Virus record (IMG/VR): IMGVR_UViG_3300013120_000738
Span: 163,726 to 227,725 of that record
Direction: 5' to 3' (one strand)
DNA length: 64,000 nucleotides
In this document: piece after piece, positions 33,974-64,000 of the stretch
Position numbering within the stretch: the stretch's first letter is position 1
How the letters are laid out: each line of letters opens with the position of its first letter
Made by a program: the position numbers and the translations under genes
The notes under the pieces: model-generated
What the model was told of the DNA's origin: nothing
Seen by the model: only the letters and a program-made list of their open reading frames with translations
The model's database searches: none

Positions 33974-34244
33974 AATCTCTTACTTTGATATCCCTAATTA
34001 ACTGATCTAAGACCCTCTCAAGATCGACGCTAGGATTGCTAAGGTCATAGGCGGAACTTGAGATACCTGTACAAAGCAAATGTGCTATTTCTACTGTAGA
34101 GCCATAAATAAAAATACGAGTCATAACAGTATCAGAAACTGAAATATCAATCCTGTGCCCGTTCCACACTCCGTATGATTGTACATGATACGCAAAAATC
34201 CTGTACCTGAGATAAGACACGATTATATCAACTAATTGACTCAT
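33939..34244 (-). CDS. DLxDP-family protein
   Basis: YDLSNPSVDLERVL. Confidence 0.65.
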   Translation of the reverse strand: MSQLVDIIVSYLRYRIFAYHVQSYGVWNGHRIDISVSDTVMTRIFIYGSTVEIAHLLCTGISSSAYDLSNPSVDLERVLDQLIRDIKVRDFVANHAPATSS

Positions 34245-35200
34245 CTCCGTTTCTTTTTAGCCTTCTTAGCTGCCTCTGCTTCGCGTACCGATTCAACATC
34301 AATTTTGTAATACGGCTCATGTTGAGGAATCTGATATCCCCTCTTCACTAACTTCTCAACATATTCATCGCACAGGGATAACAGAAATTCCACGTCTCTC
34401 TCAAATTTAAGACCTCTCGCAGTTTTCAAATACCAGATCTGATTTTTCTGTTCGTGTGGACCAAAACTGAAATGATATGTTCTGATTCGGTCAGGACTGA
34501 TCTTATCAAAATCTGTGACACTCCAGCTAGACACATTAATACCATAAGTCAACTGATCTAATACTTTGTACGATCTACAATAAATCGGAATGAAATTCCC
34601 CCACTTCTGGTCAACAAACAATCCTGTCAATTGCTTTTTTTCTGACTCTGAACCGTTTATACAGAAGTACTTTAATCTCTTTATCCACCATCCGAGTAAA
34701 TCATTATCGCGTCTTAGTCCTAAGAAACCGAAATTGAAAATTCCACGCTTCAGATAAATCGTTTCAAGTGTCTTTATGTCTCGTATAGACTCCTCTGGAG
34801 TACACCTGTGCGGAGTTACCAAGATCGGAGATTCATCAAACAAAGGCTCCAAATCAAGATATTGCAACACATACTGATCAGGATCTAGATGAACTACTCT
34901 TTCATATTCCTTGAAAAGACGATTAAATACATGACCCTTGATAGCCGTACAAAGCTCTACGATAGTATAAGACTTAGCCCATCTTGGCGTTCTAAATTCT
35001 ACAATTCGATCGATAGCAGGGTTATCGCGAAGCTCTTGCGGAACTGCACTATGGCAATCGACGCTAGTATTGACTAGAATCCAAATAAACGGATCATCGT
35101 GGAACCTTTTAAAGGACTCTGCGAGCACTTGTACTTGTGGAGCATAATTAAGATCAGATATCGTGAAATACGCAATCACTTTAGCCCCTTCGTGACACAT
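34241..35200 (-). CDS. GT-A (GT8-like) glycosyltransferase
   Basis: ELCTAIK, HLDPD (DxD), LVTPH, GIFNFGF, FVDQKW, GINV. Confidence 0.85.
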   Translation of the reverse strand: MCHEGAKVIAYFTISDLNYAPQVQVLAESFKRFHDDPFIWILVNTSVDCHSAVPQELRDNPAIDRIVEFRTPRWAKSYTIVELCTAIKGHVFNRLFKEYERVVHLDPDQYVLQYLDLEPLFDESPILVTPHRCTPEESIRDIKTLETIYLKRGIFNFGFLGLRRDNDLLGWWIKRLKYFCINGSESEKKQLTGLFVDQKWGNFIPIYCRSYKVLDQLTYGINVSSWSVTDFDKISPDRIRTYHFSFGPHEQKNQIWYLKTARGLKFERDVEFLLSLCDEYVEKLVKRGYQIPQHEPYYKIDVESVREAEAAKKAKKKRR

Positions 35201-35427
35201 CTTTTACAGATGAAATCGTCCGGAGACCATCTATCACCTTCAGTTGTCGCTCTAAGCTTTGCATATTCATCGCTTCTATACCACTCTTCTAGCGAATGGT
35301 CGTTGATATTTGGGAGAGTTACTTCACGATGATAATCCATACAACAAAGAGCTAACTGCCCATCGTACATTATATGAACCCATTTGCAAATCCTACTACA
35401 TCGCCTTAAATTGCTGGACTTTTGCAT
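35176..35427 (-). CDS. Stand-alone SPASM-type Fe-S domain
   Basis: CSRICKWVHIMYDGQLALCCMDY...NI...SLEEWY....Y..LR...ICKRC. Confidence 0.8.
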   Translation of the reverse strand: MQKSSNLRRCSRICKWVHIMYDGQLALCCMDYHREVTLPNINDHSLEEWYRSDEYAKLRATTEGDRWSPDDFICKRCVTKGLK

Positions 35428-35559
35428 AGCTACTCTGCACGTGGACAAGGACGACCGGATCACCAGGGGCATCCAAATGATCCGTCGTCATAGAGAACTT
35501 TACGCCACCACCAACCTTAGGAGTAATTTCGGTGACGCGGTAAGCAACTGTCGATTCGT

Positions 35560-35751
35560 CTAGCACGATCGAAGAAGTCCTGTACCAATCAAATCGTTCA
35601 CAGCTTGTTTCAGAAGAGCCTCTTGTTGATGCTTCTTATGCTTCTCGTCCTTCTGAGTATGGGCGACGGCAGCCTCTTCATCAGTCAAGTCCACCGTTTC
35701 ACCACAGACAGGGCACCGAGCCTCAGTCGGGAACATCGTACCACTAAGCAT
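35560..35751 (-). CDS. Small Zn-finger protein
   Basis: CPVC...AH...H. Confidence 0.55.
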   Translation of the reverse strand: MLSGTMFPTEARCPVCGETVDLTDEEAAVAHTQKDEKHKKHQQEALLKQAVNDLIGTGLLRSC

Positions 35752-36046
35752 TTTCTTCTTCCTCTCTACGTCTTCGACGTCGCTTAACCTTCTCGATCCC
35801 ATCGGCAATAGCGGCCCACAGAAACACACCGCCAAGCCCAAGAACAAAACCTACCGGAATCTCAAAGACCACACAGAGCAACTTCTGCCAGAACGTAGCT
35901 GGACCAAAAGCCCACCAAATCCCGTAGATGGCACCACACCACAATGTGATCACAAAGATCGCAGAAATGATTGGTCCACCAATCACATTCAGCACAGTAT
36001 TGAAAAGAGCACTTTCTGCTCGATCAAGCAGTGTTCGCCGCCGCAT
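35744..36046 (-). CDS. Two-TM membrane protein
   Basis: Two hydrophobic stretches, basic C-tail. Confidence 0.65.
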   Translation of the reverse strand: MRRRTLLDRAESALFNTVLNVIGGPIISAIFVITLWCGAIYGIWWAFGPATFWQKLLCVVFEIPVGFVLGLGGVFLWAAIADGIEKVKRRRRRREEEENA

Positions 36047-61862: not shown

Positions 61863-62796
61863 GTAGGACCATTTCGTCCTCTGGGCTCATGCCATTTGTC
61901 TCTTCCGCATCACCGGCAAGAGCCTTCGTGAGCATATTACCAAGGATCGATCGCTTCACGGTCTTTTGTTCATAATTGTCGGGGATATTCTTACCACCGC
62001 TGATTAGGACTTCGAGATCCATTGGAGTCTCGACGACAACGTACTCGACTTCGCCGAACATCAGTGCGACCGTCTGAATCAATTCGTCCACTTTGCCGAT
62101 CATAGCACCGAATAGCGGCGTCGGGCTCTTTGTGATCTGCTCGTAGATGTGTTTGACCTTCTTGAGGGTCAGGACTGTCGGATCGTCAGCGGGCATCAGA
62201 GTCCACATGCCGCCGTTTGTGATCGGCCGGAGAGTCATCGTGGCGTGGTCGACAATATATCCATCTTGCTTGAGGAGTCGTACGTCCATTTCGACGAGGG
62301 CTACACTTTCGCCGTGGCCTGCATGGTACAATCCGAAGTGGCCAATAATTGGCTTGTCCTCGTCCTCTTTCTCCGGTGGCTGAAACTCACTGGCGAACTC
62401 TTGAAGGGCCTCGAGAACGCTTTCGTCGTCTGGAATGCAGACAACAATTTCATCACCGTCGATCTTGCCGATGTTAATTGGTTCACCGTCTTCGATCTCG
62501 ACCTGCCACAACTTCCACTCGTCACAGTCCACATAGACATCGTGAGAGCCATCCTCGTTCGTTTTCAAGTACGTGACCTGAATTGAACTCGATAGGATTT
62601 GAAGGTCAGACAGGACTTCCACCCAGATGTTGTGGCCGTCGTTTGTTTCTTGGCAACCGGGGGCGGGTTCTCGATCGGCGTACTCTTCAAAGTACTCTTC
62701 TGGAGATCTTCCCCAATTCTTGATGAATTCTGTTCGCTTACCCGCGTCGTCGATCGCTTTGATGCACTCTTCTCGTGAGGTAGGAAGTGTCGTCAT
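61789..62796 (-). CDS. Acidic hypothetical protein (335 aa)
   Basis: Long ORF with RBS. Confidence 0.7.
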   Translation of the reverse strand: MTTLPTSREECIKAIDDAGKRTEFIKNWGRSPEEYFEEYADREPAPGCQETNDGHNIWVEVLSDLQILSSSIQVTYLKTNEDGSHDVYVDCDEWKLWQVEIEDGEPINIGKIDGDEIVVCIPDDESVLEALQEFASEFQPPEKEDEDKPIIGHFGLYHAGHGESVALVEMDVRLLKQDGYIVDHATMTLRPITNGGMWTLMPADDPTVLTLKKVKHIYEQITKSPTPLFGAMIGKVDELIQTVALMFGEVEYVVVETPMDLEVLISGGKNIPDNYEQKTVKRSILGNMLTKALAGDAEETNGMSPEDEMVLHAAEDAAQDECCSHGDCDADESDD

Positions 62797-62945
62797 TTCG
62801 TTTCCCCTGTAGGTCTTTAGTCAAGCTTGGGTGGAGGCAAGCCATCGCTCCAAGCTTGTACAGATCCCTCTTCGTGTTGATGACCATGACGACATCTTCA
62901 TCATGGCCGGTTATTAATAGCAGATCGTCCTTCAAGACAAATCCA

Positions 62946-63437
62946 CTAACTCTGGTTGGTTTCAGCGACGGAAAAAGATTCTTCGCCGCTTTCTTCGCTG
63001 CTCGCCAAATCATCGGTAAGTCCTCGTTCGACGTGGTACATCTCGGCGTCGCCGAGCGGTTGTAGTTGAATTCGGCACCCCTGCCACTTATCCATAGTCC
63101 ACAATTGGTTCTTTGTCTCAGTAAATCTGGTGATAATAATACGGAATTGGGCAGTAGGCCTGTAAAAGGCCTGATAGGCGATGCTCGCGTCTACCTCCTC
63201 GAAGAAGGTGGCACGATCGTATCGCATATTATCGAAGAGCCCTGGGAGGTCTCGGCCGGTCACCAGAGCGTATTGTTGCCATTTGAGAGTTGATGGAAGC
63301 TTTCTCATCTTATCCTCCCGCACATTTCGGGCACAAAGTTTTGCCCTGTGCTGAATTAGCGTAAGAATCACTGCATTCTGCTCCACAGCGGTCGCACAAC
63401 ACTTCATCCAAGTAAGTGGCGAAGAGATAATGGTCAA
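62946..63437 (-). CDS. Hypothetical protein
   Basis: Probable start at MRKLPSTL. Confidence 0.55.
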   Translation of the reverse strand: MTIISSPLTWMKCCATAVEQNAVILTLIQHRAKLCARNVREDKMRKLPSTLKWQQYALVTGRDLPGLFDNMRYDRATFFEEVDASIAYQAFYRPTAQFRIIITRFTETKNQLWTMDKWQGCRIQLQPLGDAEMYHVERGLTDDLASSEESGEESFSVAETNQS

Positions 63438-63837
63438 CCGGATGCGATCCCATGAAAATCGTGCCCACTACCAAACAATCAGCACCGCTGCTGACAAATT
63501 TCTCATTGTGTAAATGGACACTACCAAGTTCATCAATGTCATCCTTGACTTGCAAAGTATCAGGGCTGCAGAATGGTTCCTGTTCGTCGTCGTTGAACTG
63601 ATCTGACCAGAGTTGTTTCAAAAACGTATCTCGGCCATGGTTTTTCTCAGGGATTTCGATAATTTTTCTCCATGGTACCGGATGTTCTCGCAAATCCAGA
63701 TTGCCGACTATCCAGCTTGAGATAATTGCTCTAGGCATCCTTTCCTCCTTGATGTTCTGCAGTCTTTCTGCGTCTTTCGTCGAATTCCAGAACGCGCCGA
63801 ATCGCCTGTTCGCGGATGTGATCGGCGTAGTCATCAC
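63310..63837 (-). CDS. Hypothetical protein
   Basis: Downstream of promoter 63912; ends uncertain. Confidence 0.5.
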   Translation of the reverse strand: MMTTPITSANRRFGAFWNSTKDAERLQNIKEERMPRAIISSWIVGNLDLREHPVPWRKIIEIPEKNHGRDTFLKQLWSDQFNDDEQEPFCSPDTLQVKDDIDELGSVHLHNEKFVSSGADCLVVGTIFMGSHPVDHYLFATYLDEVLCDRCGAECSDSYANSAQGKTLCPKCAGG

Positions 63838-63954
63838 CTTGCTCTATCGCGTCTACGGCTTTCGCGATGGACTGCGGCACGCCGTGTTTCGACTGCTCTC
63901 CTACACAACACTGTTACAAAAGATATGATGGTAGTTAATTTAGTAGGAGGAATC

Positions 63955-64000
63955 ATGAAAGTAGTAATGACACTCCTCGTAAGGGACGAGGAAGACATTA
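63955..64000 (+). CDS. GT2-type glycosyltransferase, N-terminus only (truncated by window)
   Basis: AGGAGG then MKVVMTLLVRDEEDI. Confidence 0.7.
   Translation, partial: MKVVMTLLVRDEEDI

What the first reader, a model, noticed from the sequence alone, without database searches (positions are those of the whole stretch)
34241..64000. Dispersed glycan-building and decorating pathway including a sulfotransferase
Seen: GT8-like GT, galE, SAM methyltransferase, Stf0-like sulfotransferase, rmlB, rmlA and a GT2 start. rmlC/D and base-hydroxymethylating enzymes are not in the window. Established: RmlA/B make dTDP-4-keto-6-deoxyglucose, and sulfotransferases use PAPS. Inference: a sulfated or methylated glycan on the virion, DNA or host surface. 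A sulfotransferase is unusual in phages and would suit a host rich in sulfated-glycan metabolism.
Basis: partly seen in the sequence, partly recalled or inferred. Interest (0 to 1): 0.62.

Follow-up and report, generated by a model that had tools for sequence, protein, structure and literature searches.

The report
Huge marine phage's glycan-sulfation gene toolkit
The sugar-activating, sugar-transferring and sulfotransferase genes seen in this window are real, and they belong to a much larger set in a roughly 345-kb marine phage (six sulfotransferases, about 13 glycosyltransferases, eight sugar-nucleotide enzymes), which suggests the phage builds its own sulfated, methylated glycan.

Summary
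- GT8-like glycosyltransferase, 34241-35200(-)
- GalE, 45990-46988(-)
- class I SAM methyltransferase, 48162-49142(-)
- NodH/Stf0-type PAPS sulfotransferase, 54993-55676(+)
- dTDP-glucose 4,6-dehydratase-like, 57414-58418(-)
- short glucose-1-phosphate thymidylyltransferase-like, 58985-59734(-)

The 'GT2 start' at the window end was not found.

The window is the last 64 kb of a 227.7-kb marine virus contig. The virus is tailed, with a sheath and a DnaE-type polymerase. Near-identical contigs from other samples put the genome at about 345 kb or more.

Outside the window the same contig carries:
- five more, mutually unrelated, sulfotransferases
- a near-full-length UDP-sulfoquinovose synthase homologue
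- a cytoplasmic Cys-type sulfatase
- GDP-mannose dehydratase, a fucose-synthase-like enzyme and CMP-Kdo synthetase
- about 12 further glycosyltransferases, including GT47, GT92 and RXYLT1-like families

The contig has no RmlC, no APS kinase, no thymidylate-synthase-type hydroxymethylase and no multi-pass membrane protein.

Best reading: soluble phage enzymes use host PAPS to assemble an anionic, sulfated and methylated glycan in the infected cytoplasm. The acceptor is unresolved: virion proteins slightly favoured, then host envelope, with DNA unlikely. All of this is in silico. Single phage sulfotransferases have been reported before; I found no report of a set this size.

The parts
34241..35200 (-). 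GT8-like retaining GT-A glycosyltransferase (319 aa, P0002); invariant D106-P-D108
   Evidence: Homologues carry PF01501. Profile hits glycogenin and a GT8 structure (3tzt), and LgtC only weakly at E 0.11. AF2 plus Foldseek give LgtC/glycogenin at E about 5e-9. Atlas structural neighbours are GT8/Nucleotid_trans, including GT-methyltransferase fusions.
45990..46988 (-). UDP-glucose 4-epimerase GalE (332 aa); last gene of a tightly overlapping four-gene run with the methyltransferase
   Evidence: TIGR01179 419 bits against a cut-off of 262; Pfam Epimerase 1.3e-59.
46981..48172 (-). Two ORFans (131 aa and 276 aa) overlapping GalE and the methyltransferase by 8-35 nt; function unknown, presumably co-expressed
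   Evidence: ORF coordinates. No Pfam, PHROG or NCBIfam hit. The word search returned only a 230-aa, 100%-identical sequence that appears to be the same gene under a shorter gene call.
48162..49142 (-). Class I SAM-dependent methyltransferase (326 aa); substrate not established
   Evidence: Methyltransf_23 5.9e-14 plus Methyltransf_11/12/25. Only sub-threshold NCBIfam hits. No informative PDB relative.
54210..54836 (+). Cys-rich HNH endonuclease gene upstream of the sulfotransferase on the minority strand
   Evidence: phrog_2255 HNH endonuclease 3.3e-7; sequence.
54903..54976 (-). tRNA with anticodon UCA (opal-suppressor type), 17 nt upstream of the sulfotransferase start on the opposite strand
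   Evidence: ARAGORN. Rfam tRNA 63.9 bits. No sign of TGA recoding in the genome.
54993..55676 (+). NodH/Stf0-type PAPS-dependent carbohydrate sulfotransferase (227 aa, P0001); 5'-PSB loop R15-T-G17-S18 and 3'-PB R101..S110
   Evidence: Relatives align from residue 5-6, which supports the 227-aa gene model over the shorter IMG gene calls.
57414..58418 (-). NDP-glucose 4,6-dehydratase (RmlB-like, 334 aa)
   Evidence: TIGR01181 301 bits (cut-off 365). PDB dTDP-glucose 4,6-dehydratases at 6.7e-69 with TDE and YxxxK aligned.
58388..58954 (-). HNH homing-endonuclease-type gene inserted between rmlA and rmlB; not an RmlC
   Evidence: phrog_374 HNH endonuclease 1e-23; no Pfam hit.
58985..59734 (-). 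Short-form glucose-1-phosphate thymidylyltransferase-like enzyme (RmlA-like, 249 aa)
   Evidence: NTP_transferase 3e-40. TIGR01207 158 bits (cut-off 360). PDB 3hl3 at 1e-46.
60138..60953 (+). Second phrog_374-type HNH endonuclease gene, just beyond rmlA
   Evidence: phrog_374 7.1e-28.

Best explanation
Region 34241-64000 is part of the accessory arm of a huge (about 345 kb or more) marine tailed phage. The phage carries a genome-wide, dispersed set of soluble enzymes for making and decorating a glycan.

In the window:
- The RmlA-like and RmlB-like enzymes convert glucose-1-phosphate to an NDP-4-keto-6-deoxyglucose, most likely the dTDP form.
- GalE supplies UDP-galactose.
- A GT8-like retaining transferase adds a hexose.
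- A class I methyltransferase may O-methylate the product.
- A NodH/Stf0-type sulfotransferase moves sulfate from host-made PAPS onto a sugar hydroxyl.

With the out-of-window genes, the likely product is a complex anionic, sulfated and methylated heteroglycan assembled in the infected cell's cytoplasm. Those genes are five more sulfotransferases, a UDP-sulfoquinovose-synthase homologue, GMD, an Fcl-like enzyme, KdsB, a partial Galf mutase, about 12 glycosyltransferases and a cytoplasmic sulfatase.

Shown here: gene identities, folds, conserved cofactor motifs, and the absence of membrane machinery and of PAPS synthesis on the contig. Inferred: that the enzymes act in one pathway, the nucleotide and acceptor specificities, and the target.

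My split for the target is: phage virion or other phage proteins about 0.35-0.4, host envelope glycan about 0.3, no common product about 0.2, DNA about 0.05. The confidence given here is for the general statement (a phage glycan-building and sulfating toolkit), not for any one target.
For: Gene identities are.

The sulfotransferase keeps the invariant PAPS-binding residues R15, G17, R101 and N210, and the nearly invariant S18, N103 and S110. Its model is a confident sulfotransferase fold. Its nearest full-length relatives are proteins with two or three tandem sulfotransferase domains, and one cluster is named both 'glycosyltransferase' and 'LPS sulfotransferase NodH' by its sources.

Contig-wide toolkit:
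- six GT2 places
- Sulfotransfer_2 x4, Sulfotransfer_4, GT47 x2, GT92, Nucleotid_trans, Glyco_trans_1_2, Glyco_tranf_2_5, GLF, sulfatase and CTP_transf_3
- UDP-sulfoquinovose synthase model 543.5 bits over its full length; GMD 456.6 bits (above cut-off); KdsB 203 bits (above cut-off); Fcl-like 272 bits

Structural neighbours of the GT8-like protein include GT-methyltransferase fusion proteins.

No ORF on the contig has four or more predicted TM helices, so the enzymes look soluble.

The contig is not a chimera. Contigs from other samples are 99.9-100% identical and collinear across these regions.

The phage nature is shown by a tail sheath, DnaE-type polymerase, NAD ligase and SbcC.
Against: - The genes are scattered among ORFans and homing endonucleases, not in one operon. 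Co-function is therefore an inference.
- No RmlC or RmlD equivalog is present, so the fate of the 4-keto sugar is unknown.
- RmlA-like and RmlB-like score below NCBIfam equivalog cut-offs, so the nucleotide (dTDP or UDP) is not fixed.
- The methyltransferase has no link to sugars beyond its neighbourhood.
- There is no APS kinase on the contig, so sulfation depends on host PAPS or on the unseen roughly 35% of the genome.
- No RNA run holds the region, so expression is untested.
- IMG gene callers disagree on the sulfotransferase ORF: 166 aa, 120 aa or no call.
- No experimental data of any kind.
Confidence: 0.6

Rival explanations
1. Host-envelope remodelling. The enzymes act on the host's own lipid-linked LPS, capsule or exopolysaccharide intermediates during infection or pseudolysogeny. 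This would change the cell surface, for example to block superinfection or to stop progeny sticking to debris, as proposed for the 24 'LPS genes' of cyanophage P-SSM2.
For: - The sugar set is typical of bacterial surface polysaccharides: Kdo (KdsB above cut-off), GDP-fucose route, 6-deoxyhexose, Galf, galactose.
- The closest solved relative of the sulfotransferase is an 'LPS sulfotransferase NodH'.
- GT2 enzymes commonly work on undecaprenyl-linked acceptors as peripheral proteins (general knowledge).
- Precedent: PMC1079782.
Against: - No initiating phosphoglycosyl transferase, flippase, polymerase or ligase candidate: no ORF with four or more TM helices on 227.7 kb.
- The phage would have to rely entirely on host export machinery.
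- About 35% of the genome is unseen.
Confidence: 0.3
2. No common pathway. The genes are independent morons or auxiliary metabolic genes that each adjust host metabolism separately. Examples: boosting nucleotide-sugar pools, making sulfoquinovose for sulfolipid to spare phosphorus, or sulfating small molecules.
For: - The genes are dispersed over more than 180 kb among ORFans and three HNH endonuclease genes in the window alone.
- The six sulfotransferases are mutually unalignable, which suggests separate origins.
- Single viral sulfotransferase and UDP-sulfoquinovose-synthase genes have been reported as isolated auxiliary genes (PMC10580990, PMC7785012).
Against: - The density is high: roughly 30 glycan-related genes among 368 ORFs.
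- There are local clusters: GT2 with GT1_2, a sulfotransferase and GT2_5 at 43-54 kb, and the 130-145 kb block of SDRs, methyltransferases, GTs and the sulfatase.
- About 13 glycosyltransferases need a polymer to build.
Confidence: 0.2
3. DNA hypermodification. The sugars, possibly sulfated or methylated, are attached to phage DNA bases to evade restriction.
For: - Virus-encoded glycosyltransferases that glycosylate DNA exist, as cited within PMC12619734.
- The contig shows other hints of DNA base modification: a PurZ-like gene at 223 bits, a Dam-like methylase and a weak QueC hit.
Against: - No thymidylate-synthase-family hydroxymethylase on the contig.
- The glycosyltransferase families present are GT2, GT8, GT47 and GT92, not known DNA glycosyltransferases.
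- I know of no reported sulfated DNA modification.
Confidence: 0.05
4. Artefact or decay. The region is a mis-assembly, cellular contamination, or a set of decaying genes.
For: - GC is heterogeneous: 52-55% in window 1-30 kb against about 41% elsewhere.
- The Galf mutase homologue covers only the C-terminal two thirds of the model.
- Gene callers disagree on the sulfotransferase.
Against: - Contigs assembled from other samples (87-340 kb) are 99.9-100% identical and collinear.
- The ORFs are intact and catalytic motifs are conserved.
- Phage hallmark genes sit on the same contig.
Confidence: 0.03

Closest known systems
NodH / Stf0 family of PAPS-dependent carbohydrate sulfotransferases (PDB 9vki 'LPS sulfotransferase NodH'; 1tex Stf0 trehalose 2-sulfotransferase)
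   Same: Same fold, with both PAPS-binding motifs conserved. About 230 aa, soluble, single domain. The family profile hits 9vki at 7.5e-27 and 1tex at 1.4e-11.
   Different: At most about 36% identical to any full-length protein in 1.8 billion representatives; only one partial metagenomic sequence, 166 aa, reaches about 50%. Scores far below the Stf0 equivalog cut-off (22 against 400 bits). Encoded by a phage, next to an HNH endonuclease gene and a suppressor-type tRNA. Acceptor unknown.
dTDP-L-rhamnose pathway RmlABCD
   Same: RmlA-like and RmlB-like enzymes are adjacent and have conserved catalytic motifs. More than 250 deposited phage genomes also carry an RmlB homologue.
   Different: No RmlC anywhere on the contig and no RmlD equivalog. 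An HNH endonuclease gene sits between rmlA and rmlB. Both enzymes score below the equivalog cut-offs. The end product is therefore probably not made by the classical four-enzyme route.
Cyanophage P-SSM2 'LPS gene' clusters (24 genes; PMC1079782)
   Same: [quoted passage not shown]
   Different: Here the genes are dispersed rather than in two clusters. They include six sulfotransferases, a sulfoquinovose-synthase homologue and a sulfatase. The phage is unrelated: DnaE-type polymerase, at most 28% identity to any deposited phage.
Autonomous glycosylation machinery of giant viruses (chloroviruses, mimiviruses) and virion glycosylation in mycobacteriophages
   Same: Virus-encoded nucleotide-sugar synthesis plus many soluble glycosyltransferases and methyltransferases, including eukaryote-type families (GT47, GT92, RXYLT1-like), with no membrane assembly machinery. 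The comparison to giant viruses rests on my own knowledge. Mycobacteriophage virion glycans are cited in PMC12619734.
   Different: The host is a prokaryote. To my knowledge sulfation has not been described for any of those systems. Attachment to virion proteins is not shown here.
Single sulfotransferase or UDP-sulfoquinovose-synthase auxiliary genes in marine viruses (Synechococcus phage S-SRM01 and OM43-phage MVGs, PMC10580990; Cariaco Mu-like virus, PMC7785012)
   Same: Marine viral genomes carrying a PAPS sulfotransferase or an SqdB homologue; function unknown.
   Different: Those are isolated genes. Here six sulfotransferases, an SqdB-like gene and a sulfatase occur together with about 13 glycosyltransferases in one genome.

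Membership tests
PAPS-dependent sulfotransferase superfamily (NodH/Stf0-like) | Significant match to the family models | tested here: met
   PF00685 30.4 bits and PF09037 26.3 bits, cut-off 22. Profile against 9vki at 7.5e-27 and 1tex at 1.4e-11.
PAPS-dependent sulfotransferase superfamily (NodH/Stf0-like) | 5'-phosphosulfate-binding loop and 3'-phosphate-binding motif | tested here: met
   R15, G17 and R101 are invariant and S18, N103 and S110 nearly invariant across 75 relatives, and all are present in the phage protein.
PAPS-dependent sulfotransferase superfamily (NodH/Stf0-like) | Sulfotransferase alpha/beta fold | tested here: met
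   AF2 pLDDT 90.6. Every Foldseek match with E<=0.001 is a PAPS sulfotransferase (TPST2, Stf0, NDST1, CurM ST and others), at modest TM 0.4-0.54.
PAPS-dependent sulfotransferase superfamily (NodH/Stf0-like) | PAPS-dependent sulfate transfer to a carbohydrate acceptor | not testable with these tools
   Needs an enzyme assay. The only indirect support is from relatives that sources name both glycosyltransferase and NodH.
Stf0 trehalose 2-sulfotransferase (equivalog NF047724) | Score above the equivalog cut-off | tested here: not met
   22.1 bits against a cut-off of 400. It is Stf0-like in fold, not an Stf0 orthologue.
dTDP-L-rhamnose pathway (RmlABCD) | RmlA: glucose-1-phosphate thymidylyltransferase | tested here: inconclusive
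   Best PDB hits are all RmlA (1e-46), but TIGR01207 scores 158 bits against a cut-off of 360. Nucleotide specificity is open.
dTDP-L-rhamnose pathway (RmlABCD) | RmlB: dTDP-glucose 4,6-dehydratase with TDE and YxxxK | tested here: inconclusive
   PDB hit at 6.7e-69 with the motifs aligned, but TIGR01181 scores 301 bits against a cut-off of 365.
dTDP-L-rhamnose pathway (RmlABCD) | RmlC 3,5-epimerase present | tested here: not met
   PF00908: no match on the 227.7-kb contig, while controls ring in 11 of 14 genomes. The ORF between rmlA and rmlB is an HNH endonuclease. The contig is estimated 63% complete.
dTDP-L-rhamnose pathway (RmlABCD) | RmlD 4-reductase present | tested here: not met
   No ORF reaches the rmlD model. 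The other SDRs are GMD, Fcl-like, SqdB-like and GalE.
UDP-glucose 4-epimerase GalE | Score above the TIGR01179 equivalog cut-off | tested here: met
   419.1 bits against 262.3.
Glycosyltransferase family 8 (retaining GT-A) | Sequence match to PF01501 / GT8 proteins | tested here: inconclusive
   The protein itself gives no Pfam hit. Its 46-51% homologues carry PF01501. The profile hits glycogenin at about 1e-4.
Glycosyltransferase family 8 (retaining GT-A) | GT-A fold with a DxD metal/nucleotide-sugar motif | tested here: met
   Foldseek top hits are LgtC, glycogenin and 3tzt at E about 5e-9. D106-P-D108 is invariant. The model is of moderate quality (pLDDT 72.9).
Virus-encoded autonomous glycosylation system (giant-virus type) | Virus encodes its own nucleotide-sugar synthesis plus multiple glycosyltransferases | tested here: met
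   Eight sugar-nucleotide enzymes and about 13 glycosyltransferases on the contig.
Virus-encoded autonomous glycosylation system (giant-virus type) | The glycan is attached to virion structural proteins | not testable with these tools
   Needs virion glycoproteomics.
Bacterial Wzx/Wzy- or ABC-type surface-polysaccharide gene cluster | Initiating phosphoglycosyl transferase, flippase/polymerase or transporter (polytopic membrane proteins) | tested here: not met
   A hydropathy scan found no ORF with four or more TM segments among 368 ORFs. The method is crude and the contig incomplete.

The most novel reading that the evidence does not exclude
This huge marine phage autonomously builds a sulfated and sulfonated, methylated, glycosaminoglycan-like anionic glycan on its own virion or other phage structures. 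It would use six different phage sulfotransferases fed by host PAPS and a phage UDP-sulfoquinovose synthase. To my knowledge this would be the first sulfated glycan shown to be made by a virus of bacteria, with a phage-encoded cytoplasmic sulfatase to edit it.
Probability: 0.25. Interest if true: 0.85.

Novelty: new variant of a known kind. Interest (0 to 1): 0.66.

Why it matters
Virus-encoded glycan synthesis is established for giant eukaryotic viruses and for a few phages, but I know of no evidence for sulfation by a phage. The literature found here says the role of phage sulfotransferases 'remains unclear' (PMC10580990).

A single uncultured marine phage carries six divergent sulfotransferases, a sulfoquinovose-synthase homologue, a sulfatase, about 13 glycosyltransferases and eight sugar-nucleotide enzymes. 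That makes the question directly testable.
- The enzymes can be expressed and assayed.
- The product, if it coats the virion, would bear on phage adsorption, on evasion of grazers or defences, and on the fate of organosulfur in the sea.
- The divergent, compact, soluble sulfotransferases (about 230 aa) are also potential biocatalysts for glycan sulfation.

Tried and rejected
SEARCHES THAT FOUND NOTHING USEFUL
- Megablast of 15 kb against 50,697 phage records: no match.
- tblastn of the sulfotransferase, of a family representative and of the SqdB-like protein against phages: none. The Sulfotransfer_2 protein hit only Bacillus phage F16Ba, weakly.
- The search for related loci in viral contigs with the sulfotransferase and with the 441-aa ORFan: nothing.

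HOST IDENTIFICATION FAILED
- The DnaE-type polymerase has at most 28% identity to any phage.
- The GMD homologue is 57-64% identical to proteins from many phyla.
- IMG sample numbers occur in no paper.
- Weak Shine-Dalgarno use is only a hint.

IDEAS TESTED AND DROPPED
- That the 188-aa ORF between rmlA and rmlB is a hidden RmlC or isomerase. It is an HNH endonuclease.
- That the sulfotransferase cassette is a compositionally foreign island. Its GC (37%) is close to neighbouring genes and to the HNH genes.
- That the UCA tRNA signals TGA recoding. TGA-terminated ORFs extend no further than TAA or TAG ones, so the standard code was kept throughout.
- That a radical-SAM/SPASM protein is a sulfatase maturase. 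Only generic radical-SAM hits were found.

OTHER DEAD ENDS
- Three encoding-contig look-ups failed because my ORF starts differed from the recorded gene calls.
- The 340-kb and 290-kb sister contigs could not be searched as records. The unseen roughly 117 kb of the genome was therefore not examined for cysC/cysDN, rmlC/D or membrane machinery.
- The 276-aa ORFan between the methyltransferase and GalE has no relatives and was not folded.
- SRA runs hold the stretch only as short DNA contigs. No RNA run holds it, so expression is untested.

Full report
WHAT THE WINDOW IS

The window is the last 64 kb (C1:163726-227725) of a single 227,725-bp linear virus record. CheckV estimates it at 63% complete. 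A simple ORF call under the standard code gives 368 ORFs covering 94.7% of the contig.

The contig encodes a tail sheath (phrog_23, 1e-80), a DnaE-type DNA polymerase, an NAD-dependent ligase, a helicase and an SbcC-like nuclease. It is therefore a contractile-tailed jumbo phage.

It has no close relative among 50,697 deposited phage records. Megablast finds nothing, and the polymerase is at most 28% identical to any of them.

Contigs from other JGI samples are 99.9-100% identical and collinear with it. They are 87, 68, 290 and 340 kb long; more than ten contigs carry the tested proteins. The contig is therefore not a chimera. From the offsets of the 340-kb contig, the genome is at least about 345 kb.

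Public runs that hold the stretch are labelled marine metagenome. They come from two studies, contain only short DNA contigs, and include no RNA run.

CHECKING THE OBSERVATION

Six of the seven named genes are real.

- GalE (45990-46988, minus strand) passes the TIGR01179 equivalog cut-off, 419 against 262 bits.

- The SAM methyltransferase (48162-49142, minus) is a generic class I enzyme (Methyltransf_23, 6e-14). Nothing in NCBIfam or the PDB says what it methylates.

- The RmlB-like protein (57414-58418, minus) scores 301 bits on the dTDP-glucose 4,6-dehydratase model, below the cut-off of 365. Its ten best PDB matches are all (d)TDP-glucose 4,6-dehydratases, up to 6.7e-69, and the TDE and YxxxK motifs align.

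- The RmlA-like protein (58985-59734, minus; 249 aa) is a short-form sugar-1-phosphate nucleotidyltransferase. Its best PDB matches are all glucose-1-phosphate thymidylyltransferases (1e-46). It also scores below the equivalog cut-off, so dTDP is likely but not certain.

- The 'GT8-like' ORF (34241-35200, minus) gives no hit in Pfam, NCBIfam or PHROGs. Even so:
  - its 46-51% homologues carry PF01501;
  - a profile of nine relatives hits glycogenin-1/2 (E about 1e-4), a GT8 crystal structure and, only weakly at E 0.11, LgtC;
  - D106-P-D108 is invariant;
  - the AF2 model (pLDDT 72.9) is closest to LgtC, glycogenin and the UGGT catalytic domain at E about 5e-9;
  - Atlas structural neighbours say the same, and include bacterial proteins in which this domain is fused to a class I methyltransferase.

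The 'GT2 start' at the window end is not there. The last ORFs have no family match, the only open-ended frame is 25 aa, and none of the contig's six GT2 matches lies in the window.

One other point in the region: 36024-37013 is a polynucleotide kinase/phosphatase-like gene (AAA_33 plus PNK3P), not a sugar gene.

THE SULFOTRANSFERASE

The 227-aa ORF at 54993-55676 lies on the plus strand, against the local flow of transcription.

Sequence evidence:
- It passes the Pfam cut-offs for Sulfotransfer_1 and Stf0.
- The word-indexed search found only one relative, a 166-aa fragment at 50% identity that its source names 'LPS sulfotransferase NodH'.
- The exhaustive search found 2213 relatives at E<=1e-3, and 181 at E<=1e-10. 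The nearest full-length ones are only about 30-36% identical, and they align from residue 5-6 to the end. This supports the 227-aa gene model. IMG's callers gave 166 aa, 120 aa or no gene on identical DNA.
- In an alignment of 75 relatives, R15, G17, R101 and N210 are invariant and S18, N103 and S110 nearly so. These are the two PAPS-binding motifs, and the phage protein has all of them.
- The profile hits PDB 9vki ('LPS sulfotransferase NodH') at 7.5e-27 and Stf0 at 1.4e-11.

Structural evidence:
- The AF2 model has pLDDT 90.6. Every Foldseek match with E<=0.001 is a PAPS-dependent sulfotransferase, although TM-scores are modest at 0.4-0.54.

It is therefore a NodH/Stf0-type enzyme. It is not an Stf0 orthologue, scoring 22 bits against a cut-off of 400.

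Its closest full-length relatives are long proteins with two or three tandem sulfotransferase domains. One cluster, from Candidatus Peribacter, is named both 'glycosyltransferase' and 'LPS sulfotransferase NodH' by its sources.

LOCAL ANATOMY

Three HNH endonuclease genes sit among these genes:
- one directly between rmlA and rmlB (58388-58954; phrog_374, 1e-23), where I had hoped for an RmlC;
- one just beyond rmlA (60138-60953, plus strand; 7e-28);
- one upstream of the sulfotransferase (54210-54836, plus strand; phrog_2255, 3e-7).

Between that last endonuclease gene and the sulfotransferase, on the minus strand, lies a well-formed tRNA with anticodon UCA (Rfam 63.9 bits). The genome shows no TGA recoding, so I kept the standard code throughout.

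The methyltransferase, two ORFans (276 and 131 aa) and GalE overlap one another by 8-35 nt. They probably form one transcription unit.

The sulfotransferase gene is 37% GC, similar to its neighbours. It is not a compositional island.

THE WIDER PICTURE

This is the main result. Reading the rest of the contig changes the scale of the finding.

Sulfur-related genes:
- Precomputed Pfam hits on the identical sister contig, and direct family searches, show five further sulfotransferase-family ORFs. Four are Sulfotransfer_2, at C1:45.4, 53.6 and a tandem pair at 155.5-156.8 kb. One is Sulfotransfer_4, at 122.7 kb.
- By eye, four of these five keep PxxGxT/S-type and RNPxxRxxS-type motifs.
- The six sulfotransferases are mutually unalignable by BLAST, except for the tandem pair (21% identity). 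This is not a recent expansion.
- A 395-aa protein matches the UDP-sulfoquinovose synthase model over its full length (543.5 bits, E 2.6e-163, just under the cut-off of 575).
- A 427-aa sulfatase has the CxPSR formylglycine motif and no signal peptide.

Sugar-nucleotide genes:
- GDP-mannose 4,6-dehydratase, above cut-off.
- A GDP-fucose-synthase-like SDR.
- CMP-Kdo synthetase, above a subfamily cut-off.
- The C-terminal two thirds of a UDP-galactopyranose mutase.

Transferases and methyltransferases:
- About 12 glycosyltransferases: GT2 several times, Glyco_trans_1_2, Glyco_tranf_2_4/2_5, Nucleotid_trans, two Exostosin/GT47 (one also RXYLT1-like) and GT92.
- Methyltransf_21 and Methyltransf_24 methyltransferases.

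What is absent on this contig:
- RmlC
- APS kinase
- thymidylate-synthase-family hydroxymethylase
- any ORF with four or more predicted transmembrane segments

HOW IT MOST LIKELY WORKS

From established enzymology, RmlA and RmlB make dTDP-4-keto-6-deoxy-D-glucose, GalE interconverts UDP-glucose and UDP-galactose, GT8 enzymes transfer hexoses with retention from UDP-sugars, and NodH/Stf0-type enzymes move sulfate from PAPS to a sugar hydroxyl. None of these activities was tested here.

Because no PAPS synthesis gene is on the contig, the sulfate donor must come from the host or from the unseen third of the genome. Because all the enzymes look soluble, the chemistry happens in the infected cytoplasm.

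I infer that the window genes are part of one phage programme that builds a complex anionic glycan containing 6-deoxyhexose, galactose, fucose, Kdo and possibly sulfoquinovose, decorated with sulfate and methyl groups.

The acceptor is the open point.
- Virion or other phage proteins. I lean slightly this way because membrane assembly genes are lacking, and because the set resembles the self-contained glycosylation systems of giant viruses and the virion glycans of mycobacteriophages (the latter cited in PMC12619734).
- Host envelope. The sugar palette and the NodH kinship fit this almost as well. It is the reading proposed for the 24 'LPS genes' of cyanophage P-SSM2 (PMC1079782).
- DNA. I consider this unlikely.
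- No common pathway. A collection of unrelated auxiliary genes cannot be excluded.

COMPARISON WITH WHAT IS KNOWN, AND NOVELTY

RmlB homologues occur in 259 deposited phage records, so the rml pair is ordinary.

Single sulfotransferases have been noted in Synechococcus phage S-SRM01, in OM43-phage genomes and in glacier viromes. One paper states that their function is unclear. A single viral UDP-sulfoquinovose synthase was reported from the Cariaco Basin. Viral sulfotransferase clusters exist in metagenomic protein space.

I found no paper using the phrases 'phage-encoded', 'viral' or 'virus-encoded sulfotransferase', and none linking sulfotransferases with jumbo or huge phage biology.

I therefore rate the window finding as a new variant of a known kind. 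Virus-encoded glycan machinery is known; a built-in, multi-enzyme sulfation layer is, to my knowledge, new.

LIMITS

- Everything here is computational.
- Nucleotide and acceptor specificities, expression and host are all unknown.
- About a third of the genome was not available to search.
- The hydropathy scan and my ORF calls are crude.

Noticed in passing
window 54903-54976 (-): A well-formed 74-nt tRNA with anticodon UCA, an opal-suppressor type and not a long-arm Sec tRNA. It lies 17 nt upstream of the sulfotransferase start, on the opposite strand. The genome shows no TGA recoding: 137 of 368 ORFs end in TGA, and their read-through extensions are not longer than for other stops. Only two other tRNAs (Met, Pro) are on the contig.
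   Followed up: partly
window 54210-54836 (+), 58388-58954 (-), 60138-60953 (+): Three HNH endonuclease genes are interspersed with the sugar genes. One is wedged between rmlA and rmlB. Two are phrog_374 paralogues. They look like free-standing homing endonucleases in an accessory region.
   Followed up: partly
window 36024-37013 (-): Polynucleotide kinase/3'-phosphatase-like protein (AAA_33 plus PNK3P plus HAD). It may be an RNA or tRNA repair function and is unrelated to glycans.
   Followed up: no
window 35176-35472 (-): A 98-aa ORF consisting only of a SPASM/twitch iron-sulfur domain (2.2e-9), overlapping the end of the GT8-like gene. No radical-SAM core is seen in the adjacent frames.
   Followed up: partly
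window 1-30000 (= C1:160-195 kb): A block of about 35 kb at 52-58% GC, against about 41% for the rest of the genome. It consists almost entirely of ORFans and shows extreme strand skew at window 26-28 kb (GC skew -0.34, AT skew +0.28). The block is spanned by the independently assembled 340-kb contig, so it is not an assembly join.
   Followed up: partly
C1:136128-137315 (+) (L021:10001-11188): Full-length homologue of UDP-sulfoquinovose synthase SqdB/SQD1 (543.5 bits, E 2.6e-163). tblastn finds no homologue in 50,697 deposited phage records.
   Followed up: partly
C1:144276-145559 (-): Cys-type sulfatase with the CxPSR formylglycine motif and no signal peptide, so presumably cytoplasmic. No clear maturase (FGE or anSME) was identified; only generic radical-SAM/SPASM proteins were found.
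   Followed up: partly
C1:109413-110579 (+): Adenylosuccinate-synthetase homologue whose best model is PurZ (223 bits, cut-off 300). It hints at 2-aminoadenine in the phage DNA. A radical-SAM/SPASM gene lies next to it, a Dam-like methylase lies at C1:151985-152785, and a weak QueC hit is nearby.
   Followed up: partly
C1:~141107-141844 (L021:14980-15717 -): The UDP-galactopyranose mutase homologue covers only model positions 139-376 of 378. It is either truncated or split.
   Followed up: no
window 51453-52484 (-): A 343-aa protein with a weak ParB-like N-terminal domain match (phrog_620, 1e-4), sitting between the methyltransferase block and the sulfotransferase.
   Followed up: no
whole contig: Only about 14-17% of ORFs of at least 100 aa have a Shine-Dalgarno core 4-mer upstream. 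That is 3-4 times background but low in absolute terms. It is compatible with a host that uses few SD sites, but my start calls are naive.
   Followed up: partly
C1:126-147 kb and elsewhere: Other unusual cargo on the contig: CsrA, Cpn10, RecA, Peptidase_M14, a 'Volactin' family protein, NucS, GAF and response-regulator domains, and a 3128-aa ORF at C1:113062-122448.
   Followed up: no
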